Source: Haliotis rubra (taxonomy: Eukaryota). Taken from it: a stretch of 64,000 bases of DNA. The notes below the pieces were generated by a model that worked only from the letters and a program-made list of their open reading frames with translations, made no database searches and had not been told where the DNA came from. Both the position numbers and the translations under genes were made by a program. This document shows positions 28-40,650 of the stretch, piece after piece. The stretch covers positions 1-64,000 of the forward strand of contig NW_025767034.1 of assembly GCF_003918875.1 (NCBI RefSeq), given 5' to 3'. The first letter of the stretch is position 1. Every line of letters starts with the position of its first letter.

Positions 28-63
<36 letters not shown>
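28..63. repeat. Poly(T) run, possibly the poly(A) tail of a minus-strand retro-insertion
   Basis: About 35 consecutive T. Confidence 0.8.
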
Positions 64-2788: not shown

Positions 2789-3889
2789 ACACACTGGAGC
2801 ATATATATATATATATATAATGACCACACAGAAGATTAAGATTAAATTTATAATGTGTTCCCTTAAAGGGTTCATAGCTTAATACCATACATATTTCCAC
2901 ACAAACAGACAGTATACATATATATATATATATATATGTGTGTATATATATATATATGTGATAGTATGTGTGTCTATCTATATATATATGTGTGTGTATA
3001 TTATCTTGCCATCATGTTGCATTCGAGTAATCTTTATTGAGAGCAGTAGTGTGGTGCTAGATCGATGGAAATATCTTTTTACCACAATATTCATTCGTAA
3101 TCTCGACTTTTGATTATTGCAGAATGGGATGTAAGGGAAGCTTCTGGGTGCATACATATATATTTAGCATAACGTTTATCTACCAAGCTGAGTAAAAGCA
3201 ACGACAATCTCACTTATCCATAAATAAAAGACAATAACAAGGCCATGTATTTGAACCCATTTTTACTTGCATATATGTTGGTACAGAAAACGTTTATCTA
3301 CGTCTACGTCTCAGTCATCAACAATACTGTTTCCCTCTGTTTTATTTTATTATTCATAACCTTTACTTTATGTTGCAGCAAAATATCACAAAGGGAGGAT
3401 GAGCAGGATCTTTATCTTAGGACAAATGACATTTTTCGTCCTGACCTGGAAACAAGATTGGAAGCAGTCTCTTTGAAATCCGAGAAGATACTTTGTTGAG
3501 AAAGGTAACTAAGTCATTGTAAAACTTAGTAGATCATTGCAGCGTAGACTATAAAGTGCCTTCAGCAGTTAGGAAGGCAAACCATAAAGCATGTAGCAAT
3601 GTCTTGCTCATGTTGATTTATCTTTGAAACCATTTGCGAATGGGTTTTAGTCAACTATTCTGATTAGCTAAGGCATATTGCCCTAAAGCCTTCCATATTG
3701 CCTTTCAGCTACCCAATTACATCAGCTTCCATGTCAGGTTTGCCCAAATTGAAGCATTTCTGTCCCTTCTGATTCCTTTGTGTTATACTCGTGTCGAAGC
3801 AGTGTCCCAAAATTGACACAGGACTATCCTATGTGTAACAGCCCATACCTCCATCGAGATGTATCATTTTGATTAATTTTATTTTCCAG

Positions 3890-4680
3890 ATTGCCAAATT
3901 TTTGCGCCAACAAAACTAAGGACCCTTTAGCACAAGTGAAGAACGACTCATCGAACACATAGAAAATCATGCATACGACTTTGTTTTGAACCTCTCACCA
4001 TTGAAGTGGTAGATTTTCCAAACCCAAAGGCTGGACCATGTTTTTGTGTTCTTGTCCCATTCGTTATCAGTTGCGTTAGATTTCTGCACATCACCCCGAC
4101 CAAGCCACATTGTATGTGATGTATTCCTGGCTCTGCCTACACAGTCTGTGATAGTTTTGTCACTGGTTGATGGGGATGAATACTGTCCCGAAGCAGTGAC
4201 ATACAGTATGTCAGTGGCGAGGAGGGTGATAGAGACACTTAGCAGGTTCACTGATGAGGGATATCAACTCAATCCATGAGGTCATTCCCATTTCTCTCCT
4301 TGAGGACGCTGTTGGATTTAAGAATCGATTAAAGAAGCTGGCAAATGGAGTCTTCTCATTTTGTCACAAACGATTCTTTGGTAATGACTCCCAGTAGGTA
4401 TGAGAAAGTCCTGACTGCTTTCTGGGCTGGTGTTGCTGAAACAAGAAGTCGGTGCTAAAAGAAGAAAGTGGAGACACCGATAGCGACTTATCTTAGATTT
4501 CTCACCCAAAGAACAATGTATCATTCTGGTGGAGAACATAAACAGTAAGGACGTCGAGGTCAAGTGTATGCCTGGTAGTGGAGCCACGACTCTATTTGCT
4601 GGAGGTGGCTGGGAGACTAGACAGACTAGGGGGACTCTGCTGCTTGTATGTAGGTCACGAAAGGAGAGGGACAGGCTCAG
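3890..4680 (+). CDS. Schlafen-like gene, main exon copy 1: SWADL/linker domain plus N-terminal part of a degenerate SF1-type helicase (frameshifted as assembled)
   Basis: ttttccag / gtttat; stitched translation FLSHSLSVALDFCTSPRPSHIVCDVFLALPTQSVIVLSLVDGDEYCPEAVTYSMSVARRVIETL ... YLRFLTKEQCIILVENINSKDVEVKCMPGSGATTLLLEVARRL..LLVCRS parallels SLFN11-type FSRSWAVDL..VICDALLIAQNSTPILYTI..DYCTRTAFTLKQKL and LLTAQQYEIF..LFVHGLPGSGKT..ILYVCEN. Confidence 0.7.
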
Positions 4681-4902
4681 GTTTATTGATTTAGTCAGTG
4701 GATGTAGTTAGGTGTTATTGCCATTGTCAGCATTGGTAGTCATATCCAGTCACGAATTAACAAATGTTATAACCCAAAATATCAATTTCGTAAGTGTGTC
4801 CTCAGGGAAGAGACCTCTCTGCTTTAATAGGCCTCAACATTTTGAGACGGGTTTGCTTGAGACCCACCTGTGCTTAAGTTATTATTACAAACCCTATTTC
4901 AG

Positions 4903-5038
4903 GTCGGTGTACCCATCAGCTGTAGCAGCAGAGGGATCTCAGTATGGTGGACATGTCGTCCTGCGTGAAAAATATAGTCGATGGAAACCAACACAGTCAT
5001 GGCACAAACAAGCGGACAACATTGGCGATTTACTACCT
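4903..5038 (+). CDS. Schlafen-like gene, next exon copy 1 (Walker B region, degenerate)
   Basis: tttcag / gtgagt; SVYPSAVAAE..SMVDMSSCVKNIVDGN; duplicated at 7381-7514. Confidence 0.5.
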
Positions 5039-6375
5039 GTGAGTATATTTACATATTCGTAGAGACTCTGAATAGACAGTGCTCCAGTACTGGGTAATAA
5101 AATAAAAGACTCTCTATTTGTTAGTTAAAGCACGCTGCTATGTCAGGTCATAAAGGATGTTATTTGATAGATGCGAGAGAGAGAGCGAGAGAAAACAGCA
5201 CTGGGTTAGAATATCCACAGTAGTTCTTATGTACTGGTGATGCAAAATGAATAATCATTTTGTATACAGCGAAGACATTTTAGTTTGTTAAAGAGACTTG
5301 GACTTTCTTCACTTCAGATCCAACTGCTGCCAAAGAACTGAAGTCCCAAATGATGAGGTAGAAATGATAATGTACACTTCTGTAATGATAAGCTCCTCAT
5401 GTGAGGGTTTAGAGATGCTTCTTACCACATAAAACAGTTTACACATTTTATTTCATTTTCTCGACAGAGTCAAGTGATCGTTTTCGAAAGTATATGAAAG
5501 AGTGGTGGTTTCTGGCAATGGGACAAGTACAATTTTTTCATGAGTTTGCCTCTGGGTCAGGAATAGCTACACGCATAGGCATTGAGATCCACAACATATC
5601 ATGTAAAAGTTCCACGTCTACTTCTTCTTAATCCACTTTTAACATCTTTTTATATGTATTTGAACATAGTTTACCTGCATATATATTTGGTACAGCGTTT
5701 ATCTATAAAGCTGCTAAAGGCAAAACACCATCTCATATGCATAAATAAAGACAATCCACAAGTACATTAATGTTTCCCTGAAGAACTGAAAGCTGTTGAA
5801 CGTCTCGGTCATCAACAATACTGTTTCCCTCTGTTTTATTTAATATTCATAACCTTTACTTTATGTTGCAGCAAAATATCACAAAGGAGGATGAGCAGGA
5901 TCTTTATCTTGGGACTAAAATGACATTTTTCGTCCTGACCTGAAACAGATTGGAAACAGTCTCTTTGAAATCCGAAGATACTTTGTTGAGAAGGGTAACT
6001 AAGTCATTGTAAAACTTAGTAGATCATTGACGTAGACTATAGAAATGCCTTCAACAGTTGAAGCAAACCATAAAGCATGTAGCAATGTCTTGCTCATGTT
6101 GATTTATACTGAAACCATTTGCGAATGGGTTTTAGTCAACTATTCTGATTAGCTAAGGCGTATTGCCCCTAAAGCCTTACCATATTGCCTTTCAGCTACC
6201 CAATTACATCAGCTTCCATGTCAGGTTTGCCCAAATTGAAGCATTTCTGTCCCTTTACGATTCCTTTGTGTTATACTCGTGTCGAAGCAGTGTCACAAAA
6301 TTGACACAGGACTATCCTATGTGTAACGGCCATACCTCCATCAGGATGTATTATTTGATTAATTATATTTTCCAG

Positions 6376-7170
6376 ATGGCCAGAATTTTGCACCAACAAA
6401 ACTAAGGACCCTTTAGCACAAATTAGAAAAGAACGACTCATCAAGACACATAGAAAATCATGCATACGACTTTTTGTTTTTGAACCCTCTCACCAATGAA
6501 GTGGTAGATTTTCCAAACCCAAAGGCTGGACCATGTTTTGTGTTCTTGTCCCATTCGTTATCAGTTGCGTTAGATTTCTGCACATCACCCCGACCAAGCC
6601 ACATTGTATGTGATGTATTCCTGGCTCTGCCTACACAGTCTGTGATAGTTTTGTCACTGGTTGATGGGGATGAATACTGTCCCGAAACAGTGACATACAG
6701 TATATCAGTGGCGAGGAAGGGTGATAGAGACACTTAGCAGGTTCACTGATGAGGATATCAACTCAATCCATGGAGTCATTCCCATTTCTCTCCTTGAGGA
6801 CGCTGTTGGATTTAGAATCGATTAAAGAAGCTGCTTAAATGAGTCTTCTCATTTTGTCACAAACAATTCTTTAGTAGCCTTGACTCCCAGTAGGTATGAA
6901 AGTCCTGACTGCTTTCTGGGCTGGTGTTGCTGAAACAGAAGTCAGTGCTAAAAAGAAGAAAGTGGAGACACCGATAGCGACTATCTTAGATTTCTCACCA
7001 AAGAACAATGTATCATTCTGGTGGAGAACATAAACAGTAAGGACGTCGAGGTCAAGTGTATGCCTGGTGGTGGAGCCACGACTCTGTTGTTGGAGGTGGC
7101 TAGGAGACTGAACAGACTGGGGGACACTCTGCTTGTATGTAGGTCACGAAAGGGAGGGACGGAGGCTCAG
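6376..7170 (+). CDS. Schlafen-like gene, main exon copy 2 (tandem duplicate)
   Basis: Near-identical to 3890-4680 with the same splice sites; Walker A region reads CMPGGGATT. Confidence 0.7.
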
Positions 7171-7380
7171 GTTTGTTAGGATTTAGTCAGTGGATGTAGT
7201 TAGGTGTTATTGCCATTTGTCAACATTGGTAGTCGTATCCAGTCACAGATTAACAAATGTTATACCCCAAATGAACATCGTAAATGTGTCCTCAGGAAGA
7301 ACCTCTACTTTAATAGGCCTCAACATTTGAACGATTGCTTGAAACCTGTAGCTTAAGTTGTGTACAAACCCTGTTTCCAG

Positions 7381-7514
7381 GTCAGTGTGCCCATCAGCTG
7401 TAGCAGCAGAGGATCTCAGTATGGTGGACATGTCGTCCTGCGTCAGATATAGTCGATGGAAACCAACACGGTCATGGCACAAACAAGCGGCCAACATTGG
7501 CGGTTTTAGAACCA
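7381..7514 (+). CDS. Schlafen-like gene, next exon copy 2
   Basis: ttccag / gtgagt; SVCPSAVAAEDLSMVDMSSC... Confidence 0.5.
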
Positions 7515-8259
7515 GTGAGTATATTTACATATTCGTAGAACTCTGAATAGACAGTGCTCGGTACTTGGTAATAAAATACAAGACTCTTTCTTTGTTACAC
7601 ACACTAACATGTCAGGTCATAAAAGGATGTTTATTCTGATAGATTCCGGAGAGAACGAGAACAAACAACACTGGGTTAGAAAATCCACAGTAGTTCTTAT
7701 GTACTGGTGATACAAAAACAATCATGTCGTATGGAACAAAATCCCATTTTAGTTTGTTAAAGACTTGGACTTTCTTCACTTCAGATCAACTGCTTTATCA
7801 AAGAACTGAAGTCCCAAATGTTGGAGGTAGAATGGTAATGTACACTTCTGAAAATAAGTTCCTGGTGTCAGGGTTTTGAGAGATGCTTCTTACTACATAA
7901 ACAAATAAATGCATCCAAACATGCCAACAGCATAATATTTCTCAAATGAGTCCTCAGTTTGCCACCATATGGGGTTTGAATACATTTCCCCAAACTACCT
8001 TTCATTTTCAAAAGATGAACCATATTAATTTGAATACTGGTCTCATGAAGAGACTCACCTCATGATTACTAGTCCACATACGCTAGCATTCCAACCAAAC
8101 CAGACTTCTGTAGAAATTTCATCTCATTCCAATAATTGATTCGCTGTCAGGAAAGGTTAAAATGGAAGGATTAAAATGTTCCATCAATGTGAAGTTGTAT
8201 TGTTCCAGATCTCAGGTGATTCATTATAAACAAAGCTTTCATTTATTCTATTTAAACAG

Positions 8260-11200
8260 GAAGTCGAAGGGATGGAGAAACAAATAGATGTATGTTATCT
8301 AATGGTAAGTGTTCATAATAAACCAGCTTTTAATGATGTGAATAACGGATCTTGTGCAAATAACAGCCTCAATAAACATAATGGTAAGATTTTTAGTAAA
8401 AAGTATACATTCATGAGTTAGTGTAGGGTGATTATTACACTTCTATTTTTAACAATGTTACAGAATCTTGGAAGGAACAGATTGAACAAATCCTCAGGGA
8501 CTTCAGTGTGCTGAGAAATATTGAGAGTTTCAAACTGGGATCAACTTGGGACCTATGTCCTATATAAGGATTCCTTGAGGAGTTTACTGACATTTGTTGA
8601 TTTTGTTTAAGTTCTATTCTACATATAACCATACGTTGTTTTGTTTACTGGTGTAATCTTAAAAGTGAGTGGGACCAAAATCCTGTCCATTTTGGTCCAT
8701 TTATAGAAGCTCTACCGTTACTTTGTTACTTTACATTTACAACCTTGTTTCCAAACATGGACATAATGCACACATATTAGCAAAGATATGGCTGTGTGAT
8801 AACGTATACCAAATAGTGATTATTGTGTATTTATACCACTTTGACACATTGTGTAGGCTCATGAAGTACGCCATACTCTGGAATACAAAAGCCAAAGCCC
8901 CTCACAGCAAGCAAAGTTCAGTATGAGATGTGAGTAGTTGCAGTCAAATCTGGAACGATTATTTTAGATGAATGTGATAATTTGTTACTTATTTACTCTT
9001 ATTCACTTCAGCTTTGGGTGGTTTCAAGCAACTATCTGCTACACAAGAGGCTTGGCTGTCAGACTTGCATGACGGACTAACACAGAGGAAAAATCTTGTG
9101 TCCCGCTTCTCAGATCGGTAAGAAATTGCCAGAGAGCTTGTATATGAATCGCACACAAAGTAGTGACTAACAATCAAGGCCTGATGATGAAAGACCAGTG
9201 TGAGTAATCTATGTATTTTGTTTCAGGTCATAATCCAAGATAAAACGGAACAGATCTGTCAAGACGTTAAAATGTTCTCTTGAGAGAAGGTTTGTTGTGT
9301 TGGTAAATAAGACCAGATGATCACCATACGCCTCTAACACTCTGTAGCCAAATAAATGCTGTCGGATTTGATAGTGTCCCTCCATCATTTCACCTGTCCA
9401 ACTTCCATTCTTGACCATCGATCCAGTGTCTCTTATAACACAGAAGCTTTGTCAACCTTCATCTCTCCATTCAGTTCTCCATCCATGTTTCGGGGCGATT
9501 GGGTAGCCTTGTGGTTAAAGCGTTCGCTCATCACGCCGAAGGCCAGGTTCGATTTCCCACATAGGAACTATATGTGAAGCCATTTTTGTGTCCCCTGCCA
9601 TGATATTGCTGGAATATTGCTAAAAGCGGCATAAAACCAAACTCACTCACTCCACACCCATCCATTTTCTTCTCTTTATCCGCTCTCCAGCTACCCAATT
9701 CTGTGCCTCACTGCCATGCTAATCATCTCTCATTCTGCCTCCGTCATCTTCCCATGCACCTGCTCTTTATCTTTCCATTCACCATCTGTATCTAGTTATT
9801 TATCTACCTATTATATATTGTACCAAAGGAAATGAAATGAGAGTTCAGATATTGACATATTTAGAAAGCAATGTGTAGTACAGCAGCTGTAAAACATTTT
9901 CACAATATCTGATTCTTAATTATAGTTTCTGTTTTGTTCTTTTGATCTTTCAGCTTTGGGGATAACAGAAGCATACAGAATCAGAAACAAACCGTTGCTA
10001 TGGTATTGAAGTGGTGACACACATTGTAGCACTCGAGGTATTCTTGAAGATCAAATTATCTAATTATCTCGAGAATCAATCCTGTGCCAATATCATAAGG
10101 ATTGAAGAAGTTGTAGTGATCAGTTCCACAGGAATGTCCGTTCACTTAGGATTCCACTTGTTACTTCAAGATCAAGGGGAGGTAACTTGTCATTTCTATT
10201 CTAGGTTGGCCATGTTCAAAGTCAGACATTCAACAACAAATGGGTAAGTTGCAAGTTGTGTTTGTGTTTCTTAGTTTGGGCAGGATTCAAAATGGATTTA
10301 TCATGACTGCACGTTGCTCTCAATTCACCCCTCTCAATCTTGGATGAAGTTAGTTTCAACAAAATCTTTGTTTTGCTTGTTCCAGAGATGTTCCACATTG
10401 AATCAGAGAATGCAGGAATGGAATCTAATATCCCAGTACGTACCTTACTAAAACCCTACCTTCCTAGTAGGGTTGCAGCCCTAATTATCTGCTTTCATAT
10501 TTAATATTATGTTTTGATTGCTCCATATTTAGGAAAGATGTATGTTATCTTTAACTGAAGTCTGTCAAGATAAGAATTATAGAAAGCTGACATATCAACT
10601 AATACCATTGAATATAAAACCAGTCACAGATCACATTACTGTATACATTTCAGCGGGTATGGAAGGAAGGTGGCCAGATAAAACGATATGGAAACTGAGG
10701 TTCAGAACACTGATGGAAAAGATCCACCAGAGGCCGTAAGTATCTATGAGTGTCCTTCAGGTTAGTTCTGCTTGTCCAGTAGTACATTGAGCAATAACAA
10801 CTGTATCTAGTTTGAAGATGAAATGCTGCAGGATGTTTCCTGTGCAGCAGGTTGCTTCCTATAATTTGTGTCTGCAAATTTCGGTACAGTAATTAGGTCA
10901 TTCACTATTGAAGGTTACCCTGAACAGGTTTATTGTATCTTCTTTGAGGAGGCATTTTTAGAGTTGTAAAGATGAAAGGAAAACCAAGTTCTGTGGATAA
11001 GTCAACTTCTTTATTACAATAAATGCCACGTCGTCTCGGAGTAGATACTAACACCGTTACCAAACAAATTGATACAAGGAGTTGAAACAATGAGAGAGTA
11101 TACATAGCTGCATAGTGAGTATATACAATTGACAATCATGATGTACATTACTGGGGATTACTAATTAGTGATTTGAGCAGAGCTGGTTGATATACAGAGT

Positions 11201-12236
11201 GATTGGTTTGTGATACAGATTGAGATACATATGCAGAGTGAGTTTATACAATTGATGAGGTAGATGTACACTGAGATGGTTTATCATACCTATAGTTGAT
11301 GTTTGTTTGCAGGCTGGGACGAGATCAAACACTTAATCAAGAACTGGACAACGTACTGAAGGTAAAGACTTTTCTAATTGTTTATGATTTCACAACAGTT
11401 AACACACTGGACCCACACACTGTATGCATGAAAACATTCATAATCATTAATTAATTGTAATACTCATTACTTTCGTTTTGTTGTAGATATATATATTGGG
11501 TCCTATTGCTATTTACATATTTTTTTGTTTCAGGACAGGGGATCGTAGAAAAGGACAACTGCGCAAATTATACACGGGTGTGTAATCAGTTTCTAGAAAC
11601 AGTTAAATGTAACTGAATATCCCATACAGAATTACCACCACTATCACTGTCACTATTACTGCTACCACTATTGCCCTAGGAGACAATGACTCATTTCTGA
11701 TGACGCATTATTTATGGAAAAGTACATTACGTGATGCATCATATACACACTATATACAATTTTGTTCTTCAGTGGGTGGCAGGCTGTGATGGAATACCTG
11801 GCCAACCACAAGGCGGACTTATCTATGCTAGACATAGAGATACCAGGGTTTCAAGTCGTTGAGTACTGTCTATGTAGACTGACAGTGAATTACTAATATT
11901 TTCTAGAAAATGACGCAGTTTTATTTGAATTAGTTGACAATAAAAGCAAGTGTATTGCGTGCAAATGCGTGCGTGTGTGTGTGGGTTATAATCCACGTCT
12001 GAATCATGACATTAAGCCTGTACCCTAAGAAATTTGAATTCAAATATAAGATTTGTCAGCATGGAAACACTAGCCTTGTGCCTCTGACAACTGTTTCAGG
12101 GTTTACCAGGCAGACAACCTTCAACCTTCCCAGGACGTGTCACCTCAGTGCAAGGTACATCAGCGGTATCAACAGTAGGTCACGAGAAGAGATTGGGGAA
12201 CAGTTCGGGCCTTCAAAGGAAAAGGAGAAGACTTGA
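8260..12236 (+). CDS. Series of small plus-strand exons, probably the C-terminal extension of the Schlafen-like gene (about 8260-8304, 8464-, 9012-9117, 9954-10244, 10387-10434, 10654-10736, 11313-11361, 11773-11846, 12100-12236)
   Basis: Polypyrimidine-AG and GTRAG boundaries enclosing open frames, e.g. EVEGMEKQIDVCYLM, LGGFKQLSATQEAWLSDLHDGLTQRKNLVSRFSD, GMEGRWPDKTIWKLRFRTLMEKIHQR, LGRDQTLNQELDNVLK, GWQAVMEYLANHKADLSMLDIEIP; some exons contain stops or indels; no family recognised. Confidence 0.45.
9492..9652 (+). mobile_element. tRNA(Asp-like)-derived SINE, family A
   Basis: A box tagccttgtgg, B box ggttcgatttcc, 3' gatattgctggaatattgctaaaagcggc, (ACTC)n tail. Confidence 0.85.
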
Positions 12237-12859
12237 TGTAAAGTATGACGAGCATTGTTTCTGTCGACACTCTTTCATAATCAGTTGCAAAGGTGAATAC
12301 CATGTGTTCTTATCATGAGTTGAGAACATGAAATGTACTAAAGCTCTGTACATATCCAACTCCATGCTGATATTGGGAAGCATTTATAAAGGCCTTTCAG
12401 GATTTACCCTTGCAGTCATATCAGTATCCGCCAGCCCTTACACCATGTAAAATCACTTCATTAATATTTTCCACTTGATACTTGTTATTTGTTTGTCCAC
12501 TGTGGTCTGGTAGAAATACACACGATGCATTGGTAGCGGCTTTTAGAATGTACGCTGTCGTTTAATCCGTGTATTCATCTCTAAACAACATAGTTAGAAA
12601 ACATAATCATATTATGCATGTGTCCAATGAACACCTTGAAACGCCCTCTTTGATTTGATTCCGTGTTATAAAATTAGTCCACAGGCTAGACTATGTAAAA
12701 TCCAAGGGCAGCAAGACATCAGAGTGAAACATTAGGAACTTCTAACATGTACTTGTCTATCACTTTTCATACAACAGATTATCAGGTTCAAGAACACATC
12801 ACAAATCTGACAACACAAATAATGCTGGTCAGGACCAAGGTAAGATCCAACGCCAGCAT

Positions 12860-14860
12860 TTGTCCATTCTCCATCCATATAGTTATCCATCTCTGCTCAA
12901 AGGCTCATCTTATGTGTTCCTGTACACGAGACATGTTATCCTTCTCACTAATATGTTCATTCAAGTTATCCATCTCCATAAGAAGTATATCTTCTTATTT
13001 ATACACCATTCACTAGGCACTTCCTTCCATTCCAGTTATCCCATCTCTATCAGCTATCTTTATGTCCTTGTTATTCCACATTTATCTTCACTAATACATT
13101 TCAGTTATCCATCTCATCCAGTTATCATATGTGCCATACATAGGCGTTATGTTCTTCCATACATTCCAGTTATCCATACTCTATTATATTTAGCTACTCT
13201 TCCATTCCATTTCATCGTTCATCTACTATCATCCACTAATTCCGTTCACATTCTTCATGCTCTATTTCAAGGCTCCACCATTTATGTGTGTCATTCGAGG
13301 TCTTTTCCTTCCGGCTCAGGCTCAGTCCATTGTCAGTCAGTCTATATGTGTTACTCTTCCATCCATTCAGTTATCCATCTCCTTTTATGTGTGTCAAGTA
13401 TCTTGGCCATTCCATCTCCTATCTTATATGTGCCTGTGTGTTCTTCCTTGTATCATTCAGTTATCCCACTCACTGTTTGTGCAGTGTCATTTTGTGTTAT
13501 CCTGATGTCCATTCCATCTCTTTGTGCTGCCACTGGCTTATGTTCCATTCCATCCCATCTCCTTTATGTGTGTGTGTCTTCTTCCATATTCAGTTGTCCA
13601 TCTCGTTGTCTGTGTGTGTCCATCTTCCAATGTCCATCTCTGTGTGTCCTCCCCTCCTGTCCTGTCTGTGTGTGTGGGTTATCCACTTCTGTCTGTGTCT
13701 TCCATGTTCCATCCATCTCTCCTTATGTCATTCCTCCATCTGTCTTGTGTGCCATGCCTCCAGGTTGTCTCTCCATGTCATGTGTTGTTTGTTCCAGTTA
13801 TCCATCTCCTGTCTGTCTTGTGTCCGTGTCCATCGTGTCTGTGTGTTGTGTCATTCCGGATTGTCCATCTCTGCTGTCTGTGGTTCGTGCATCCATATCC
13901 TGTGTCTTGTGTGCCTTCATTCCGTTATCCATCTCCTTTATATGCCTTGTGCAGTCCATTCATGCGTTCCTGTCAGTTATCCATTTTCCATTCATGTGCC
14001 TCCTTTCCTTGTGTCCGCATTTCCTCTTCTTTCCATTCCACCTCCTTTCCTTCCATTCCTATATTGCCATTATGTGTCCTTGTGGTTTCCGTCCCTGGCT
14101 CCATTCCTCAGTTCCTGTGGGGTCTTCATTCCGTGCCGTACCTTCCTCATTATTCCTCCTCGTATCCATTCCACTGCTCTCATTGTGCCTTCCATCATTC
14201 CACATCTGGGTCGTTGTGTCCATGGGATTGTCATCACCTCCCTATTCCATACCTGCCTACTACTAGTCCATTCTTCATTCCATACCCTCCTGGGTCCACC
14301 TCCCTGCCTGTCCACCTCCCCTACCTGTCTCCACTACCTACTGTCTTTGCCTGCCACTTGCCTCCCTTCCTCCACTCACTACCCCTGTCTACTTACCTCC
14401 CTCCACTCCTCCTACATGCCTCCTCCCTCTGTCACCTGCCTGCTTGCCTCCTCCTGCCTGTCTGTCCCTGCCTGCTTGCCTCACCCTGCCTCCTGTCACC
14501 ACCTGCTTGCCTCCCTCCACTCCCCTGCCTCCTGCCTCTCTGTCTGCCTGCCTGCTTTCCTCCTCCCTCCCCTGCCTCCCTACCTCTCTGTCTACCTGCC
14601 TCTTGCCTCCCTCCTTCCCCTTGTTCCTGCCTCTCTGTCTGCCTGCCTTCTTGCCTCCTCCTGCCTCACCCCTGCCTACTTACCTCCTCCTGCCTGCCCT
14701 CTTGTCCTCCCTCCTTCCCCTCCCTCCCTGCCTACCCCTGCTTACATGCCCTCCTGCCAAAGGCTATGCCTTACATGAGGCTGCCGCCTGCATCCTTCCT
14801 CTCCTGCCTACCTGCCTCCCCTACCTGTCTGTCTATGTGCTTGCATTCTTTACTGTGCCT
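12860..14860. repeat. Pyrimidine-rich low-complexity tract grading from (TCCAT)/(TGTC)-like to (CCTG/CCTC)n
   Basis: Strong C/T bias on + with degenerate short-period repeats. Confidence 0.9.
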
Positions 14861-15149
14861 TGTTGTGTACGTCAGCGCTCTTGCGGATCATCAGGACAGA
14901 TGAGACAGTGACTCATGGAACTGAAACAGACAATGGCTGTCTGGAAGGATGGGTTTTTCACAGTCACCACATTAAACATATTGTTTGCTGGCCGAATCAA
15001 AAGTTTATTATTTTGTTCTTATTTAAGTTTCAATACAAAATGTATTCATATACTACTGAAGAGTTAGAGTGCCATTCTTTCAGGCGACTATAGTTTATCT
15101 GCATTGAGTGGTGGATAACCACAGAACTCGAGGTGTCAGTGTTCTTTAC

Positions 15150-15410
15150 TTGGTTGGTTGGTTGGTTGGTTAACGTCGCACTCTCAGCAATATTACAGCT
15201 ATTTGGCGGCCGTCTGTAGCAAATAATCGAGTCTGGACAGAGACAGTTCAGTGATCAACGACAGCATCGATCTCCTGTTAATCAATTGGAATACTATGGT
15301 ATGTGTCAGCCAAGTCAGAGCCTGACCACCCGACCCCGTTAGTCTCCTTTTAGCGCATGACAAGCATGGGTTACTGAAGATCAATAATTCTAACCCGGAT
15401 CTTCACGGGG
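15150..15410 (-). mobile_element. SINE-like family B, full length with TSD (other copies about 705-970 +, 26630-26880 +, 28365-28545 +, 30888-31060 -, 52351-52591 -, 53716-53915 +, 59725-59920 -, 62284-62425 -)
   Basis: Core tgacttggttgacacatgtcatcg..gatcactggattgtctggtccagac; 3' end gctggaatattgctgagtgcggcg shared with family A; TSD cagtgttcttt. Confidence 0.85.
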
Positions 15411-16011
15411 ACAGTGTTCTTTGACTTTTCTAGTAGTATATATCAATAAGTGCAATGTTATACTTTGTTCGGAAGGACAGGACTGCTGAAAAAGGAGTCG
15501 TGTCCCAACGTGAAGCAAAACACCGGTTGGGAGTATTTTGGGAACAGCACCATGGCTAAGTATTTTCTACCACATGATCGTGACACATGTATGGATACAA
15601 AGGCCATCCTTTGGTACACGTTAGATTGCTTTTTACCAAGGTGCCTTCACTTAACCACCACAGGGACCCTAGGAAAAATACTACCCACATAGGTGTCCTC
15701 CTTCCCCATCCCATATAGGTAATAATGTATATACACATTAAATAAACATTGTTCACGTGGAGGTTATGAAGACATTTACACATACATATGATGCTGTATT
15801 TTCTTTTTTGTCGTCAACCAGTCTACATGTTCATGTAGAAACGTCCTTGTGTACTAGATATTTCAATCCGTTGCAAACCACTACCAAACTGTTTTTATGC
15901 ATTGTATGTTGGAAGTGTATACTTTAACATCACAGTTTTCTCTTAGCTTTAAACTTGAAAGGGAAGGGTTTGTGATGTTAAAGGAGTTATATTTGAAAGG
16001 GATTCAAATAG

Positions 16012-16012
<1 letters not shown>

Positions 16013-16063
<51 letters not shown>

Positions 16064-16083
16064 ACACACACACACACACACAC
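16013..16083. repeat. (CA)n microsatellite
   Basis: Direct reading. Confidence 0.97.
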
Positions 16084-16931
16084 TCTTTTACTTATGATAT
16101 AATCAGAAGAGTATAAGCAGACACAGCTTTTAGCAGAGATTTGCTTTGGTTATGGTTAGGTTTTTGTTGCCTTTGCAGGGGACAAGACAAAATATTTTGA
16201 GACAATATAATGAATGATTTGCTGGGAATACAAAAATAATCTATATTATGTTATATCGTGACTATTATCTGTGAAGTCCCAAAACAAATTTGTATATGTA
16301 TGCGTCCATTTGGCAAACAATGCAAAATGTTTCATACCAGACACTTTACCTAAATATTTTCATACATTTGACTCTCACCTTTCAGATTATGGAAGCAGTG
16401 TACACGTTGTTGGACTGACACGTCGTCCTCTTCTGGTTTTCATGTAAAGGTATTTCCGAGAACAAGTGATGGGATGACTGAACGTTCTTTAAACAACACA
16501 ACAAGTGAATCAAAGAAACTGTTAAGATATCGTATCATGGTTGCTAATGATCAGGTCACCTTTATCATTAAAAACATTAAAATGGTCAGAAAGCTATCTT
16601 TTGCCATATACGGGCGTAGTAAGTTAACATTTTCAAAGGTTGGTCCAGACGTCAAATAAAACAAAACAGATAATTTAAGCCAACACCAGACAATAACCAG
16701 TCTCCAGTATCCAACCGGTACGCCGATTCAGATGGACATAAGAGGGACGTCAGCCCACCAACAGTTACATCAACCCAGTAGATGTAAATACAAAATATGA
16801 AGGCTAAGAGGATAACCGGTCTTCATCATCCACCGAGGGCGAGACGTAGTTCCGAGCTTTAATCACTGCAGCAGAGTGTATGTGTGTCATACCTGTTCTC
16901 ATCGCTGTCGTGCCGCGAAGGCTAAAATATA

Positions 16932-18699: not shown

Positions 18700-19440
18700 T
18701 TTAGCTAAATATGACAATGGAACCTTATTGTTATAATTTGTAAATCAAGAAGAGCGGGTGGTTTGTTTTATAATGTTTTTTAATTCTTTGTATGAGAATC
18801 TCGTTGAGCCTGTCTTATCATATGGTTCGGGAATTTGGGGCACTAAAATTCAATTGTATTAATGCGGTACAGAATCGAGCCTGTAGATTTTACTTAGCAG
18901 TTGGCATGGAAACCCAACTTTGCTTGCCCGTTGTGATATGACCTAGACCTTCGTGATAACAAAGCACAGAATTGAAATACTCAGATTCTGGCGCAGATTA
19001 CAAACTGCAGGTTATTCAAAGGAACACAAAGTACCGTTTGCAGATAAAATGTCAGGGGCGGTGGGGTAGCGTAGTAGTTACAGCGTTCGCTCGTCACGCC
19101 GAAGACCGGGTTCGATTCCCCACATGGGTAAAAATGTGTGAAGGCTCATTTCTGGTGTCCCCGCCCTGATATTGCTGGGAAATTGCTAAAAGCGGCGTAA
19201 AACTAAACTCAATCCACTCAGCTCAATTTCGTAGATCCTGGAATAATATTGTATTCAACCATTTCATTTTCCATTTACCAATTTATGATTTGAATAATAT
19301 CTCAACTGACGAGTTTTGTTGTCTAAAGGCTGCCTTCTGTCTCTCGATTACTCTGATTGGTTACACGGGCTTTGAAATGATTCAGGCCAAACTAGTCGGT
19401 AATACATTACGTACATATCGGCGAAGAGCTCAGCAGTGAA
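18700..19440 (+). mobile_element. Decayed LINE ORF2 fragment (post-RT region, L2/CR1-group-like), interrupted by a SINE
   Basis: LYENLVEPVLSYGSGIWG..INAVQNRACRFYL motif. Confidence 0.65.
19055..19220 (+). mobile_element. SINE family A
   Basis: Same head (gtc anticodon loop), core and tail. Confidence 0.85.
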
Positions 19441-23245: not shown

Positions 23246-24264
23246 CACGCATTGCGCGACCTCCCACCAGCTCAGCCGAGGACTGCGCTGACCGTCTGTC
23301 GAGTAGAAAGAGTGGACACAGTTGCAACCAGTTCATGTAAAATGCTGTTTCAAATATATTGGGTTATGGAGTTAATTTCCACGCAGCCTATTCAACTTTT
23401 CCATCCCTGATAAAGTGGGAAATGTTCAAACAAACAGAACAGGAAGTAAAGACATGTATTGCTTCGACATCCAACCGTCTTCATTGCTCAAAAAACGCAC
23501 ATCTGTCCGGCATTAATTGATCTCCAAACCATTACACTGATGTCGGTACAATTTATAAAGACCATAGAACTGCTTCTTTTCCAACACTTGAATAACGGTA
23601 GAAGTTAATAGAAGTTTGGCCATCGGCATCTCCTGACCAGCGTTGAAAAGTAATGAAGCATGTCGCGACACACTGACTGGTGAATTGCAACTGTAAGGAG
23701 AGTGACTGCAAGAGCGGACATAAGAAGTTGCACCTGTTCATGTGGTGTATGATGAAGAACACAAAATGCTCAAAACTACTCTAAAACCTGACACTGTTAA
23801 GTTTTATTTGTTTTACATATAATGCTTGACAGATTCATATAGAATCTACACACAAACACTTTTGTTGAGAAATCCACTTACTGAGATCGTATTTTGTCTC
23901 CGAACATCGTCCACGTCTGGCAGATATCACAGCAATGGGGGAGTAAATCAGAAGTGTACTAAAGGAATTCTTTTTATATTACGTTTTTGTATAAAGCTAA
24001 TCCGCTTTGTTTTCTTAATGAAATGCATTTTTGGATTGTCGTAGTAAATATTTTTACGTAATAAGTAGGCCTTTAATACTTAGGCTCGAAGTAGTGGGAG
24101 ATATTCTACACTGATGAAAACTACGAACGAACTTATTCAAGCGCACTGTTTGGAAACAATCCACAATCAACCGATATTTTAGTAAATATCTTTTCTGTGT
24201 CTCAGTTTGTGATAAACAAATTAGAATGAAACTGCTACACAACCAAATGCAATGTTTATTTCCG

Positions 24265-24975
24265 GGTCCTAAACTCCACCTGGACGCGGCACGGGCCAAC
24301 ACAGACTACTGCCACGTAACTACGGGCGGTCCAGCTAACAAGTTAACTTGCTGATCCCTACACACACGGGATGTGGGGCAGAACAGACTACAGGAGTACA
24401 AGGGGACCTGTAGCTCCCCATCCCCTTCCTCTCATCCTCACTCCACCCTCCACACCCCTACACCCACCCCAGATACTGGGAGACTGAAACCAGGGTGAGG
24501 GTGGATGATAAACTGTACCACCTGCCAGTCCTGGAGATGGGACTCTGCGAGGGCGGGACAGGTGGACAGTGGGAGGTATGTTTCTCTACAGCGCCGCTCC
24601 TGGTGTGTAATCCCTAGTGGTAGGGAGCTGTGGCAGACACTGGTGGAGTTTCTGTACCTGGGTGTGTAGGGAGGAGGAAGCTGGGGCAGTGTCAGCCGGG
24701 AACACCATGTCCCTCACTCCCGGCACACAGGCCACCCTCCACTATGGCGTTGTACTGGATGTGGGGAGAGGGACGAGTGGCATTCATTGACCTGGACAGA
24801 CAGGTTGTTCTAGGCAAAGTATGATGTTGAGTTCAGTGAGCCACTCGTCCCCATGTTCGAATGCTGGAGCCCGCCAGCAATACTGGCTACACTGTGTCCA
24901 TGAGTCCTGATCAGCGGGAGGGGACATCTTACGCAGCTGACACGAAGGAGCTCCTCATCTACCAAGCTGAAATAG
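24265..24975 (+). CDS. B30.2/PRY-SPRY domain exon, copy 1 (TRIM/butyrophilin-like; frameshifted as assembled)
   Basis: Stitched translation KLHLDAARANTDYCHVT..RLQEYKGTCSS..RYWETETRV..LEMGLCE..RRSWCV..HYGVVLDVGRGRVAFIDLDRQVVLGKYDVEFSEPLVPMF carries the LDxxTA, YWE, GVxLD..G.xxF and F.EPL.PxF motifs of B30.2. Confidence 0.75.
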
Positions 24976-25583: not shown

Positions 25584-26234
25584 GAGCGGTGCCGGGTATT
25601 GCAGCTAACACNNNNNNNNNNNNNNNNNNNNNNNNNNNNNNNNNNNNNNNNNNNNNNNNNNNNNNNNNNNNNNNNNNNNNNNNNNNNNNNNNNNNNNNNN
25701 NNNNNNNNNNNNNNNNNNNNNNNNNNNNNNNNNNNNNNNNNNNNNNNNNNNNNNNNNNNNNNNNNNGACAGAAACATCCAGGGTGAGGGGTGGCGGGACT
25801 GTACTGCCGGCCCTGGAGATGTAAGATAGGACTGTGTGAAGGAGGCAGGACAGGTGGAGCAGTGGGATGCATGTTTCTCTACATCGCCGCTCCTGGTGTG
25901 TCCAGTGTAGAGAGATGTAGACAGACACGAGGGAGCGTCCACCAGAACAACATGTCCCGCACTCCCGGCAGCACACAGGCCACCCTCCCACTATGGCGTT
26001 GTACTGGATGTGGGAGGAGACGATTGGCATTCATTGATCTAGACAGACAGGTTGTTCCTAGACAAAGTATAATGGAGCGATTCAATGCCAATGGTTCAAT
26101 GAGCCGATCGTCCCCATGTATTCGGTGTTAGGTTTCCGTATTCTGGCCTTACTGTGTCGAAGTTTGATCCACGGAGAGGACATCGACATGACTGACTTTA
26201 AAGAAGGCTCTCATCTACCAAAGCGCTGGAATAG
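25584..26234 (+). CDS. B30.2/PRY-SPRY domain exon, copy 2 (spans the N gap)
   Basis: Paralogous to 24480-24975: IGLCE..HRRSWCV..HYGVVLDVGRRRLAFIDLDRQVVLDKY..FNEPIVPMY..LIYQALE*. Confidence 0.72.
25612..25766. other. Assembly gap (155 N)
   Basis: Run of n characters. Confidence 1.
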
Positions 26235-28933: not shown

Positions 28934-29250
28934 CATGAGGTTGTCTCCCATATATGTATCTACCATCCATGTCCATACACTATATAAACTATACAAAGGG
29001 GAATGTGGGAACTACGTTCTGGAGACCCTGTAGAAACACATGAGTTGTCTCCCCATACATGTATCTACCATACATGTCCATACACTATATAAACTATACC
29101 AAGGGAATGTGGGAACTACGTTCTGGACACCTGTAGAAAACACATGAGTTGTCTCCCATATATGTATCTACCTCTACATGTCCATACACTATAGGAACTA
29201 TACAACGGAATGTGGAGACTACGTTCTGGAGACCCTGTATGAAACACATA
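28934..29250. repeat. About 105-bp tandem repeat, 3 copies
   Basis: catgag(g)ttgtctccc..ctacgttctggagaccctgta recurs at about 28934, 29039 and 29143. Confidence 0.9.
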
Positions 29251-31152: not shown

Positions 31153-31314
31153 GGGACAGAGGGGGTAGCCTGGTGGGTAAAGCGGTCGCTTGTCACTCCG
31201 AAGGCCCGGGTTCGCTTCCCCAAATAGGTAACATGTATGAAGCCCATTTCTGGTGTCCCCCGCCGTGATATTGCTGGAATAGTGCTAAAAGCGGCGTAAA
31301 ATCAAACTCACTCA
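31153..31314 (+). mobile_element. SINE family A with 12-bp TSD
   Basis: Full consensus match; TSD ctttattctaga. Confidence 0.9.
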
Positions 31315-31589
31315 CTTTATTCTAGAAGCATAAAACATAGTTCAGTGTACAACTTACTGACTCGCAACCCTTGTTCATTCACATATTGTTCTAAAAGCAT
31401 AAAGTTCACTTTTAAAGAAGACAGTTCACACAAAAAGAAGACACACTTAATATGAAGGATTTATACATACTTTGGAGGTTTTTTTCTTGATAGACGATAG
31501 GTAAAACTATTTAGATAATGAATCATAAATGTGACCCTATCCACAATGTTATTCATATATATAAGTATCAATTTGCATCTTTTGGAAGA

Positions 31590-37473: not shown

Positions 37474-37820
37474 AGCATCTGGATGGAACCCCAGCCAAGA
37501 GTCTACAAGATAGGACACTTTCCTATGTCTCCACACCAGATAGGTGGAACAGACCAAGATGTCTTCAGCATCTGGATGGAACCCTAGCCGAGGGTTAATT
37601 AGATGGGACACTTTCCTATGTCTCCACACCAGAGAGGTGGAACTGACCAAGATGTCTACAGCATCTGGATGGAACCCAAGCCGAGGGTCTACAAGATGGG
37701 ACTCTTTCCTGCCTCCACAGCAGACAGGTGGAACTGACTAAAATGTCTACAGCATCTAACCTAAACCCAACCTGAAGGCATACATCAAGGTGGGACGTTC
37801 TCTATACCAGACAGGAGGAA
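37474..37820. repeat. 93-bp tandem repeat, about 3.5 copies
   Basis: agcatctggatggaaccc at 37474, 37567 and 37660; degenerate copy at 37751. Confidence 0.9.
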
Positions 37821-40274: not shown

Positions 40275-40650
40275 GTAACTCCTTGTCTCATCCATGACTG
40301 CATGAGATGTTGGCATGCAAGGTCACGGACAAAGAAGGTGTCTCCTTCTCACATCCATGAGTGCATGAGATGTTGGCACGCAAGGTCACGGACACAAAAG
40401 GTGTCTCCTTCTCACATCCATGACTGCATGAGATGTTGGCAAAGCTAGTTCACGGACAAAGAAGGTGTCTCCTTCTCACATCCATGACTGCATGAGATGT
40501 TGGCACAAGGTCACAGACAGAGAAGTAACTCCTTCTTACATCCATGACTGCATGAGATGTCGGGCAAGCTAGTTCACGGACAAAGAAGTTGACCTTCCCT
40601 CATCCATGACTGCAAGAAATGTTTGCATGTGAAGTCACGGAGAGAGAGAA
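40275..40650. repeat. About 63-bp tandem repeat, 6 copies
   Basis: catccatga at 40289, 40352, 40415, 40479, 40539 and 40601. Confidence 0.92.

What the first reader, a model, noticed from the sequence alone, without database searches (positions are those of the whole stretch)
3890..7514. Invertebrate Schlafen-like gene whose helicase lacks the Walker A lysine (GSGKT to GSGAT)
Seen: a spliced plus-strand exon, hidden by frameshifts, that encodes SHSLSVAL..IVCDVFLA..YSMSVARRVIETL and then FLTKEQCIILVENINSKDVEVKCMPGSGATT..LLVCRS. Established: long mammalian Schlafens (SLFN5/11/13 type) have a SWADL linker (SRSWAVDL..VICDALL) directly followed by an SF1 helicase with GLPGSGKT, and act in antiviral and tRNA-cleavage pathways. 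Seen: the invariant Walker A lysine is Ala (codon GCC at 4583-4585 and 7075-7077) in both copies, so this is not a one-off indel error, and the next exon has no DExx Walker B. Inference: a lineage-specific Schlafen-related pseudo-helicase, perhaps a non-catalytic nucleic-acid sensor or regulator in molluscan immunity.
Basis: partly seen in the sequence, partly recalled or inferred. Interest (0 to 1): 0.85.

Follow-up and report, generated by a model that had tools for sequence, protein, structure and literature searches.

The report
Abalone Schlafen-middle-domain, dead-P-loop, SPRY gene
This stretch is part of one expressed abalone gene whose two near-identical repeats each carry the middle (SWADL) domain of Schlafen antiviral proteins plus a one-lobe motor stub that has lost its ATP-binding lysine, joined to a TRIM-like SPRY domain; the frameshifts are probably assembly errors, and the domain combination was undescribed in the papers I could search.

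Summary
GCC (Ala) sits at the Walker A lysine position at 4583-4585 and 7075-7077. It is unchanged in RNA-like and DNA-like contigs, and none of 63 modules in 46 Haliotis proteins has Lys there.

- The "two copies" are two internal repeat modules of one spliced gene (about 3120-24970).
- The listed frameshifts are contradicted by every covering contig and lie mostly at short repeat runs. They are most simply assembly errors, not pseudogene lesions.
- The reads restore a Walker-B-like IVDE in the next exon.
- Only helicase lobe 1 is present, with no lobe 2 and no Schlafen nuclease core. This is not a helicase.

Kinship with Schlafens is supported by fold. Foldseek's top 13 PDB hits are all Schlafens (E 1.4e-9). 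VIA gives SLFN5 Z 14.9 and the SLFN12 SWADL domain Z 13.1. HMM support is sub-threshold.

The C-terminus is a B30.2/PRY-SPRY domain. The family was found only in Haliotis.

The scan earlier noted SWADL plus dead-stub modules fused to GIMAP on other DNA of this genome, but not this SPRY-fused family.

An immune sensor or adaptor role is inference only.

The parts
3155..7901 (+). Two tandem DNA units (3155-5433 and 5678-7901), exons plus introns. They correspond to repeat modules 1 and 2 of one gene.
   Evidence: Self-BLAST gives 88% identity over 2320 columns. The MAFFT alignment has 178 substitutions and 49 indel events. Both units map to residues ~1-370 and ~372-740 of P0001.
3127..3147 (+). 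Tentative first coding exon (start codon, M-W-K-L-L). Low confidence.
   Evidence: The RNA-like contigs' loose end before exon A' reads ..GGATGTGGAAGCTTCT. There is only an approximate match here (GGATGTAAGGGAAGCTTCT). The exact pattern search found nothing.
3379..3504 (+). Exon A of module 1 (..QNI.KEDEQDLYL.TNDIFRPDL..YFVEK).
   Evidence: tblastn to P0001; AG acceptor and GT donor in the sequence.
3890..4680 (+). Exon B of module 1: SWADL-like domain and the first half of the RecA-like lobe. It is broken into several frames in the window.
   Evidence: A spliced joint 5993->3889 appears in two RNA-like runs. tblastn supports the exon. Read-supported edits merge the frames into stretches of 122 aa, 77 aa and about 59 aa, each free of stops.
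4571..4591 (+). P-loop-like P-G-S-G-A-T-T of module 1. The Ala codon GCC at 4583-4585 sits where Walker A has Lys.
   Evidence: Sequence read. An RNA-like contig of X5 covers 3926-4593 with no listed change at this codon. A paralogue's PGTGATT aligns on SLFN5 PGSGKTI.
4903..5038 (+). Exon C of module 1. The Walker-B-like I-V-D-(E) lies at 4974-4986, split by an extra G at 4983.
   Evidence: Every covering contig of four runs leaves out 4933 (1 nt; nearly all contig depth in X2, all in the other three), 4970 (3 nt) and 4983 (1 nt). The edited exon reads SVYPSAVAAEDLSMVDMSSCVNIVDETNTVMAQTSGQHWRFTT. The 5038->5318 GT..AG joint is.
5318..5367 (+). Exon D (PTAAKELKSQ.., the start of the helical linker) between the modules. 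The 3' end is approximate.
   Evidence: Joints 5032/5038->5318 appear in RNA-like runs X2 and X5. It is similar to P0002 ..PTNVKELKSQ...
5872..5994 (+). Exon A' of module 2.
   Evidence: X2 record 1 covers 5871-5993 and then jumps to exon B; tblastn.
6376..7170 (+). Exon B' of module 2: SWADL-like domain and the first half of the RecA-like lobe.
   Evidence: tblastn to P0001 gives E 1e-88. X2 record 1 covers 6951-7149 with 1 other letter and 0 gaps. Clean stretches are 92-97% identical to H. rubra proteins.
7063..7083 (+). P-loop-like loop of module 2. The window reads P-G-G-G-A-T-T; reads give P-G-S-G-A-T-T. The Ala codon GCC is at 7075-7077.
   Evidence: Sequence read. 7069 G>A is seen in all four runs, and there is no listed change at 7075-7077.
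7381..7514 (+). Exon C' of module 2. The Walker-B-like I-V-D-(E) lies at 7449-7461, with an extra G at 7458.
   Evidence: tblastn. A loose end 'ATATAGTCGAT' before 7459 in the DNA-like run X6 suggests the G is absent there.
8463..16444 (+). Middle exons (helical or low-complexity region): 8463-8555, 8857-8922, 9008-9271, 10385-10435, 10654-10726, 11741-11857, 12088-12240, 16385-16444.
   Evidence: tblastn of H. rubra and H. asinina homologues.
24256..24968 (+). Terminal exon encoding the B30.2/PRY-SPRY domain, again split over three frames in the window.
   Evidence: tblastn. The family profile A2 hits MID1 (E 3e-4) and TRIM25 (E 7e-4) PRY-SPRY domains. Foldseek of the model finds MID1, MID2 and TRIM25 at about E 1e-6.

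Best explanation
Window 3120-24970 (+) holds one multi-exon gene of a gene family found only in abalones (Haliotis).

Architecture (shown):
- The protein, about 1,300 aa in close homologues, starts with two tandem modules of about 370 aa.
- Each module has the Schlafen-specific SWADL (linker) fold followed by a single small RecA-like lobe. This lobe corresponds to lobe 1 of the group III Schlafen SF1 helicase domain.
- The P-loop of that lobe reads P-G-S-G-A-T-T, with Ala where Walker A has Lys.
- A helical, probably coiled-coil, stretch follows, then a low-complexity region, then a C-terminal B30.2/PRY-SPRY domain of the TRIM type.
- There is no Schlafen RNase core, and no RING or B-box was reported by Pfam.
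- The gene is spliced and expressed in at least two read sets. The frameshifts in the window are most simply consensus errors of the assembly.

Function (inferred):
- With no Lys, no second lobe and therefore no arginine finger, the module cannot act as an ATP-driven helicase. It serves as a non-catalytic scaffold or binding module.
- The nearly invariant helix and strands after the loop (LMLEVARRLxRLGxTLLVC.S.EERDRLR) are the constrained surface.
- By analogy with TRIM proteins and Schlafens, the SPRY domain would recognise a target and the helical region would oligomerise.
- The SWADL-stub modules would bind a partner or nucleic acid in an innate-immune sensor or adaptor.
For: Gene and architecture:
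- tblastn of Haliotis proteins maps collinear exons across 3392-24968.
- Spliced joints A->B, B->C and C->D occur only in the two RNA-like runs. These runs have no depth in the intron bins that the DNA-like runs cover.

Assembly errors:
- For most of the 12 listed indels every covering contig disagrees with the window.
- Most of the 12 lie at or beside homopolymer or dinucleotide runs.
- Applying the listed ones in module 1's exons B and C restores exon C and merges exon B frames, with no in-frame stop.

Ala at the Lys position:
- It is unchanged in the contigs.
- Across 63 modules of 46 proteins the position is A in 53, T in 8, G in 1, S in 1, and never K.
- It aligns on the Lys of SLFN5 PGSGKT.

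Schlafen fold:
- Foldseek against PDB: the top 13 hits are all Schlafens, E 1.4e-9 to 1.3e-3.
- VIA second look: SLFN5 353-684, Z 14.9, 273 aa; SLFN11 370-706, Z 12.4; SLFN12 392-549, Z 13.1, rmsd 3.0-3.1.
- Foldseek-independent scan of 48,161 chains: SLFN12 and SLFN11 lead, other helicases reach Z <= 9.7 and match mainly on the lobe.
- ESM Atlas fold search: chordate Schlafens, TM 0.58-0.60.
- Embedding search: the top clusters carry PF21026.
- The SWADL fold is reported to have no other structural homologue (PMC12135189).

SPRY domain.

Family range: Haliotis only.
Against: - HMM-level support is below threshold. PF21026 scores E 0.22 on the window piece and 3e-5 (24.1 bits against a cutoff of 27) on P0006. 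The A1 profile finds no Schlafen in PDB.
- The structure model is of middling confidence (mean pLDDT 64, 12-row alignment).
- The read sets are coded, so I cannot show they come from the window's own individual.
- Contigs differ from the window by a few percent in introns too. A decayed paralogue is therefore not excluded.
- The RNA contigs could come from a very close paralogue.
- No evidence here bears on ligand, nucleotide binding, localisation or immune induction. The functional part is analogy only.
Confidence: 0.65

Rival explanations
1. The window locus is a decayed pseudogene copy of the family. The frame-restoring contigs would then come from an intact paralogue or from another individual or species.
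For: - There are many frameshifts in both modules and in the SPRY exon.
- No run holds more than 0.49 of the sampled words.
- Contigs differ from the window by a few percent in introns as well (table 8).
- Clean stretches are only 92-97% identical to the nearest annotated H. rubra proteins.
- Earlier scan notes call related loci of this genome broken (unchecked).
Against: - At 4041, 4347, 4970, 4983, 5916 and 6716 no covering contig, and at 4933 no DNA-like contig, carries the window's version.
- Most of the listed indels sit at or beside homopolymer or dinucleotide runs.
- The corrected segments contain no nonsense codon in about 260 codons and stay 92-97% identical to homologues.
- DNA contigs also match the flanking introns, so they come from this or a near-identical locus.
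Confidence: 0.18
2. The module is not Schlafen-related. It would be a generic P-loop NTPase remnant (STAND- or RecA-like) preceded by an unrelated domain, and the Schlafen matches would be artefacts of a mediocre model.
For: - No Pfam hit reaches its family's gathering score on a single domain.
- Weak P-loop hits go to nSTAND_NTPase5, GvpD and ResIII.
- The A1 profile finds nothing in PDB.
- Model pLDDT is 64.
- Bacterial NERD-helicase models give TM 0.39-0.48.
Against: - Schlafens top four separate structure searches and the embedding search.
- The SWADL part alone matches SLFN12 at Z 13.1 and rmsd 3.0-3.1 A over 142-146 residues, and no other fold approaches it.
- The single best phmmer hit in PDB for a paralogue is SLFN5, collinear from the ..CD.. 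motif to the P-loop.
Confidence: 0.1
3. The P-loop still binds a nucleotide or phosphate ligand without Lys (an atypical NTP-binding switch), so the module is a regulated sensor and not an inert scaffold.
For: - G-[ST]-G-x-[TS]-T and a Walker-B-like DE are kept in the window gene's subfamily. PGSGATT occurs in 33 of 63 modules, and DE in 28 of the 55 with a readable motif.
Against: - In other subfamilies the second module has lost the glycines altogether (SKREATV, CDEDART) and the DE (LD, HK, YD), while the flanking helix stays invariant.
- Lobe 2 and its arginine finger are absent.
- Even intact-motif human group III Schlafens show no ATPase activity in vitro (PMC12135189).
Confidence: 0.07

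Closest known systems
Group III Schlafens (human SLFN5, SLFN11, SLFN13, SLFN14)
   Same: SWADL/linker fold directly followed by SF1 helicase lobe 1. Collinear structural alignment to SLFN5 353-684 and SLFN11 370-706. The P-loop lies at the same place.
   Different: No N-terminal RNase (Slfn core) domain. No helicase lobe 2. Lys replaced by Ala. The module is repeated one to three times in tandem. Coiled-coil plus B30.2 at the C-terminus. Invertebrate, and found only in Haliotis.
SLFN14 (a group III Schlafen without an intact Walker A)
   Same: A natural Schlafen whose P-loop cannot hold ATP and which is an inactive helicase (PMC12135189; PMC8875196).
   Different: SLFN14 keeps both lobes and an active RNase domain. 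The abalone module has neither.
SLFN12 (group II: RNase core plus SWADL domain)
   Same: The best single-domain structural match: Z 13.1, rmsd 3.0-3.1 A over 142-146 residues.
   Different: SLFN12 has the RNase core and no P-loop lobe. Sequence identity is only about 16%.
TRIM-type B30.2/PRY-SPRY proteins (MID1, MID2, TRIM25, TRIM21, RIPLET)
   Same: The C-terminal helical region plus B30.2 domain resembles the C-terminal half of TRIM proteins.
   Different: No RING or B-box was reported by Pfam, so no E3 ligase module. The N-terminus is the Schlafen-like module array instead.
Abalone SWADL plus dead-helicase-stub genes fused to a GIMAP GTPase
   Same: The same kind of module (Schlafen middle domain plus a dead helicase stub) joined to an immune-type domain.
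   Different: The partner domain there is GIMAP/AIG1, and here it is coiled-coil plus B30.2. No sequence link between the two families was tested here, and the exhaustive phmmer did not retrieve them.

Membership tests
Schlafen family | N-terminal Schlafen core / RNase domain (Slfn box, PF04326 AlbA_2), shared by all Schlafens | tested here: not met
   No PF04326 hit in any of the family proteins scanned or in precomputed Pfam lists. Homologues begin directly with the module (M-W-K-L-L-Q-N-I..).
Schlafen groups II/III | SWADL (linker) domain fold | tested here: met
   SLFN12 392-549 at Z 13.1, rmsd 3.0-3.1 A, 142-146 residues. SLFN5, SLFN11 and SLFN14 at Z 11-15. Top of a Foldseek-independent scan of 48,161 chains. 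The model is of middling confidence (pLDDT 64; core 70-90).
Schlafen groups II/III | Pfam PF21026 (SLFN_GTPase-like) at the gathering score | tested here: inconclusive
   E 0.22 on the window piece. E 3e-5 and 24.1 bits against a cutoff of 27 on P0006. One of 12 modules at E <= 1.
Schlafen groups II/III | SWADL motif S-W-(A/S)-(V/G/L)-D-(L/I/V) (PMC8875196) | tested here: not met
   The window has S-L-S-V-A-L-D-F and the family consensus is S-L-[SA]-x-x-L-D-[FI]. There is no Trp. The motif is recognisable only if a two-residue insertion is allowed, which is my inference.
Schlafen group III / SF1 helicases | Two RecA-like lobes with SF1 motifs I-VI (PF09848) | tested here: not met
   Only about 110 residues (model 250-350) match helicase lobe 1. 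The next residues are a long helix and then the next module or the linker. No PF09848 hit.
P-loop NTPases | Walker A GxxxxGK[ST] | tested here: not met
   P-G-S-G-A-T-T; GCC at 4583-4585 and 7075-7077. No listed change at either codon in RNA- and DNA-like contigs. 0 of 63 modules have Lys.
P-loop NTPases | Walker B hhhhDE | tested here: met
   Not readable in the window as written, because an extra G at 4983 and 7458 splits the D and E codons. Contigs restore N-I-V-D-E-T in module 1. DE is kept in 28 of the 55 family modules with a readable motif.
TRIM family | [quoted passage not shown] | tested here: not met
   No RING or B-box family was reported by Pfam in eight plus six full-length homologues. 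Only the helical region and the B30.2 domain resemble TRIMs.
B30.2/PRY-SPRY domain proteins | B30.2 beta-sandwich at the C-terminus | tested here: met
   Profile A2 against PDB: MID1 E 3e-4, TRIM25 E 7e-4. Model pLDDT 73, pTM 0.77. Foldseek finds MID1, MID2 and TRIM25 at about E 1e-6, probability 1.00.

The most novel reading that the evidence does not exclude
The SWADL domain plus a one-lobe, lysine-less P-loop stub is a portable, ATP-independent module. Abalones have multiplied it and joined it to different immune-type domains: coiled-coil and B30.2 here, and GIMAP GTPases elsewhere in the genome according to earlier scan notes. This would form a mollusc class of innate-immune sensors or adaptors. 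It would also mean that the part of Schlafens held to be vertebrate-specific and without structural homologues is an older metazoan module that was joined to the RNase core separately.
Probability: 0.3. Interest if true: 0.75.

Novelty: new variant of a known kind. Interest (0 to 1): 0.55.

Why it matters
Reviews state that Schlafens are confined to mammals, Xenopus and a chimaera fish (PMC8875196). A recent structural paper states that the SWADL fold has no structural homologue outside group II and III Schlafens (PMC12135189). An abalone family that carries this fold changes both statements. It lacks the RNase core, has a dead one-lobe motor stub, is repeated in tandem and is joined to a TRIM-like SPRY domain. 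It also offers a natural test of what the SWADL domain and lobe 1 do without catalysis.

There is a practical point for this genome too. Apparent frameshifts in repeated immune-gene loci should be checked against reads before a gene is called a pseudogene.

Tried and rejected
- **Pfam and PDB phmmer on single window ORF pieces**. These gave only chance-level hits: ketoreductases, protocadherin, photosystem subunit.
- **Profile A1 against PDB sequences**. No Schlafen was found.
- **Weak hits of the exhaustive search**. P0009 and P0011, with 13-14 stretches, are repeat proteins matching 'VIVLSLVDGDE'. P0012, from a wasp, fails hhalign (probability 0.2). All three are rejected as relatives.
- **Exact search for the RNA contigs' 5' exon in the window**. 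There were 0 matches, and only an approximate match at 3127-3147.
- **'Two gene copies.'** Rejected, because spliced contigs and homologues place both units in one transcript.
- **'Raw-read-like error rate explains the 88% identity.'** Only partly right. Substitutions outnumber indel events 178 to 49 between the units, so the units differ in reality as well.
- **The joint 5351->5866 and the 4442->6951 'skip'**. I took these as laying artefacts between near-identical units, not as splice events.
- **Residue-level structural superposition of the SWADL motif.** I could not obtain it because the tools give ranges only.
Full report
**What is in the sequence.**

- ORF 4046-4279 reads ..SHSLSVALDFCTSPRPSHIVCDVFLALP..YSMSVARRVIETL.
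- The stretch from 4499 reads ..KEQCIILVENINSKDVEVKCMPGSGATT..LLLVCRS.
- GCC stands at 4583-4585 and at 7075-7077.

A self-BLAST shows two tandem units, 3155-5433 and 5678-7901. They are 88% identical over exons and introns, with 178 substitutions and 49 short indel events between them.

**It is one gene, not two copies.**

An exhaustive phmmer search with the 87-aa ORF 6474-6734 found a small set of abalone proteins. The best is Haliotis rufescens XP_048246453 (P0001, 1342 aa, 'uncharacterized').

tblastn of these proteins on the window gives the following picture:
- The two units correspond to the two internal repeat modules of one protein, residues ~1-370 and ~372-740.
- Further exons follow at 8463-8555, 8857-8922, 9008-9271, 10385-10435, 10654-10726, 11741-11857, 12088-12240 and 16385-16444.
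- The terminal exon lies at 24256-24968.

Homologues carry one, two or three modules.

**Reads: spliced, expressed, and the frameshifts are not in them.**

I laid two small RNA-like contig sets (X2, X5; two organism labels) and two DNA-like sets (X7, X6) on 3300-7600.

Splicing:
- Only the RNA-like sets show exon-exon joints. These are A' 5993 -> B 3889 (both sets), C 5032/5038 -> 5318 with GT..AG ends, and the B -> C junction (a joint in X5, loose ends in X2).
- The RNA-like sets have no depth in intron bins that the DNA-like sets cover.
- The C -> D joint, with weaker contig evidence beyond it, and the two-module homologues place both modules in one spliced mRNA, from this gene or a very close paralogue.

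Indels:
- For most listed indels all covering contigs of all four sets differ from the window in the same way. The listed ones include 3938 +A, 3983 +T, 4041 -1, 4347 -1, 4443 -2, 4933 -1, 4970 -3, 4983 -1, 5916 -2 and 6716 -1. Another 43 are not listed. Some contigs at 3938, 3983, 4443 and 4933 keep the window's form.
- Substitutions are few. X2 record 1 has 1 other letter in 199 nt at 6951-7149.
- Most of the listed indels lie at or beside homopolymer or dinucleotide runs.

Applying only the listed, read-supported changes to module 1's exons B and C in a script has three effects:
- Exon C becomes the clean ORF SVYPSAVAAEDLSMVDMSSCVNIVDETNTVMAQTSGQHWRFTT.
- Exon B merges into stretches of 122, 77 and about 59 residues.
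- No in-frame stop remains within these stretches.

The frameshifts are therefore most simply consensus errors of the assembly in a repeated locus.

I cannot prove that the coded runs come from the assembled individual. Contigs also differ from the window by a few percent in introns. The pseudogene reading therefore keeps some weight (0.18).

**The Walker A alanine is real and family-wide.**

- X2's RNA-like contig across 6951-7149 carries GCC at 7075-7077. Its only difference there is 7069 G>A.
- 7069 G>A is seen in all four sets and makes module 2 read G-S-G-A-T-T as well.
- Across 63 modules of 46 Haliotis proteins from four species (isoforms included) the position is A in 53, T in 8, G in 1 and S in 1. 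It is never K.
- In one subfamily the second module has lost the glycine loop altogether (SKREATV, CDEDART). The helix and strands after it (LMLEVARRLxRLGxTLLVC.S.EERDRLR) stay nearly invariant.

**Is it Schlafen-like?**

By HMM the support is weak:
- PF21026 (SLFN_GTPase-like) scores E 0.22 on the window piece.
- It scores E 3e-5 and 24.1 bits on P0006, below the cutoff of 27.
- A 12-module profile finds no Schlafen among PDB sequences.

By fold the support is strong. I modelled module 2 of P0001 with AlphaFold2 (mean pLDDT 64; core 70-90). The searches gave:

| Search | Result |
|---|---|
| Foldseek against PDB | Only Schlafens in the top 13 (SLFN5 E 1.4e-9, then SLFN14, SLFN11, SLFN12); next hits E > 5e-3 |
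| VIA-align, second look | SLFN5 353-684, Z 14.9, 273 aa; SLFN11 370-706, Z 12.4; SLFN12 392-549, Z 13.1, rmsd 3.0-3.1 A, 142-146 aa |
| VIA-align wide (Foldseek-independent, 48,161 chains) | SLFN12 and SLFN11 first; ordinary helicases follow at Z <= 9.7, matching mainly model residues 231-350 |
| ESM Atlas fold search | Chordate SLFN13-, SLFN14- and SLFN12-like clusters, TM 0.58-0.60 by query |
| Language-model embedding search | Top clusters carry PF21026 |

One sequence-level result agrees. The single best phmmer hit in PDB for P0006:60-330 is SLFN5:
- E is 0.11, which is not significant on its own.
- The alignment is collinear over 174 residues.
- It aligns ..kCDlll.. on ..iCDall.. and PGTGATT on PGSGKTI, which puts the Ala on the Walker A Lys.

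The SWADL fold is reported to have no structural homologue outside group II and III Schlafens (PMC12135189). The match is therefore informative.

**What it is not.**

- There is no Schlafen RNase core (PF04326) in any family member.
- Only helicase lobe 1 (about 110 residues, strand-loop-helix P-loop through Walker B) is present. Lobe 2 and SF1 motifs III-VI are absent. 'Helicase' or 'pseudo-helicase' therefore overstates it.
- The literal SWADL motif is not met. The window has S-L-S-V-A-L-D-F, with no Trp.
- A dead P-loop is also not unprecedented among Schlafens. SLFN14 lacks an intact GxxxxGKT, and all tested group III Schlafens lack ATPase activity in vitro (PMC12135189; PMC8875196).

**The rest of the protein.**

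The last ~220 residues form a B30.2/PRY-SPRY domain:
- An 18-sequence profile hits MID1 (E 3e-4) and TRIM25 (E 7e-4).
- The model (pLDDT 73, pTM 0.77) matches MID1, MID2, TRIM25, TRIM21, TRIM7 and RIPLET PRY-SPRY domains at E about 1e-6.

A long helix follows each module. Pfam reported no RING or B-box. The architecture is therefore [SWADL + dead lobe 1] x 1-3, then a helical region, then B30.2.

**Family and evolution.**

- All true homologues found are from Haliotis (rufescens, rubra, cracherodii, asinina): 38 long and 7 short proteins, all annotated 'uncharacterized' or misnamed.
- Clean window stretches are 92-97% identical to H. rubra proteins.
- A maximum-likelihood tree of 29 modules shows two patterns.
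  - In the window gene's subfamily, modules cluster by gene or species. This points to recent tandem duplication or homogenisation, and matches the intron-level similarity in the window.
  - In another subfamily, first and second modules form separate old clades.
The family-wide count is the real support.

**Mechanism.**

Shown: the architecture, the splicing, and the absence of Lys and of lobe 2.

Inferred:
- The module is a non-catalytic scaffold or binding unit.
- The SPRY domain recognises a target, the helical part oligomerises, and the whole acts as an innate-immune sensor or adaptor.
- This rests on analogy with TRIMs and Schlafens and on the lineage-specific expansion.

Nothing here tests ligand, nucleotide binding or induction.

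**Earlier notes of the scan (unchecked AI notes).**

- The same genome, called blacklip abalone there, holds Schlafen core nucleases and genes joining a SWADL domain and a dead helicase stub to a GIMAP GTPase on other DNA.
- This SPRY-joined family was not among those notes.
- Two of those notes call their copies broken. Given, that should be rechecked against reads.

**Literature.**

I found no paper on Schlafen-like genes in Haliotis. One mussel transcriptome paper mentions 'Schlafen proteins' by automatic annotation only (PMC7772429).

**Verdict.**

- It is a real, probably intact and expressed member of an undescribed abalone family that reuses the Schlafen SWADL domain and lobe 1 without catalysis.
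- Novelty: new variant of a known kind.
- Interest: 0.55.

Noticed in passing
window 25768-26208 (after the N run 25612-25766): A second, partial B30.2/SPRY-coding stretch lies just behind an assembly gap. It matches the same C-terminal residues as 24256-24968. It may be the last exon of a neighbouring paralogue or redundant assembly around the gap.
   Followed up: partly
window 9486-9656 and at least 13 other places (e.g. 19055-19219, 31163-31316, 47220-47381, 54341-54487): A dispersed repeat of about 160 bp occurs on both strands at 72-85% identity. It looks like a SINE-type element.
   Followed up: no
window 57568-59274; 55521-56169; 40272-40647; 28934-29249; 37474-37757; 48849-49224: Several tandem arrays with periods of 112, 46, 63, 104, 93 and 172 bp. 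Together with the dispersed repeats they fill much of the second half of the window.
   Followed up: no
Haliotis homologues P0005, P0006, P0026, P0030 versus P0015-P0020: Two modes of module evolution occur in one family. In one subfamily there are old, position-specific first and second modules, and the second has lost the glycine loop. In the other, modules have been recently duplicated or homogenised within a gene, and their number varies from one to three.
   Followed up: partly
window 3300-7600 and 24256-24968: Short indels relative to all read-derived contigs, mostly at homopolymer or dinucleotide runs, suggest that this repeated locus escaped polishing. Other 'broken' Schlafen-like loci noted for this genome may have the same cause.
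   Followed up: partly
P0008 (XP_046579241, Haliotis rubra): A one-module family member is named 'mRNA export factor GLE1-like' in RefSeq. The name probably comes from its low-complexity MQERR/EMRE repeat tail and looks like a misannotation.
   Followed up: no
window 28-63: A run of 36 T at the very start of the window.
   Followed up: no
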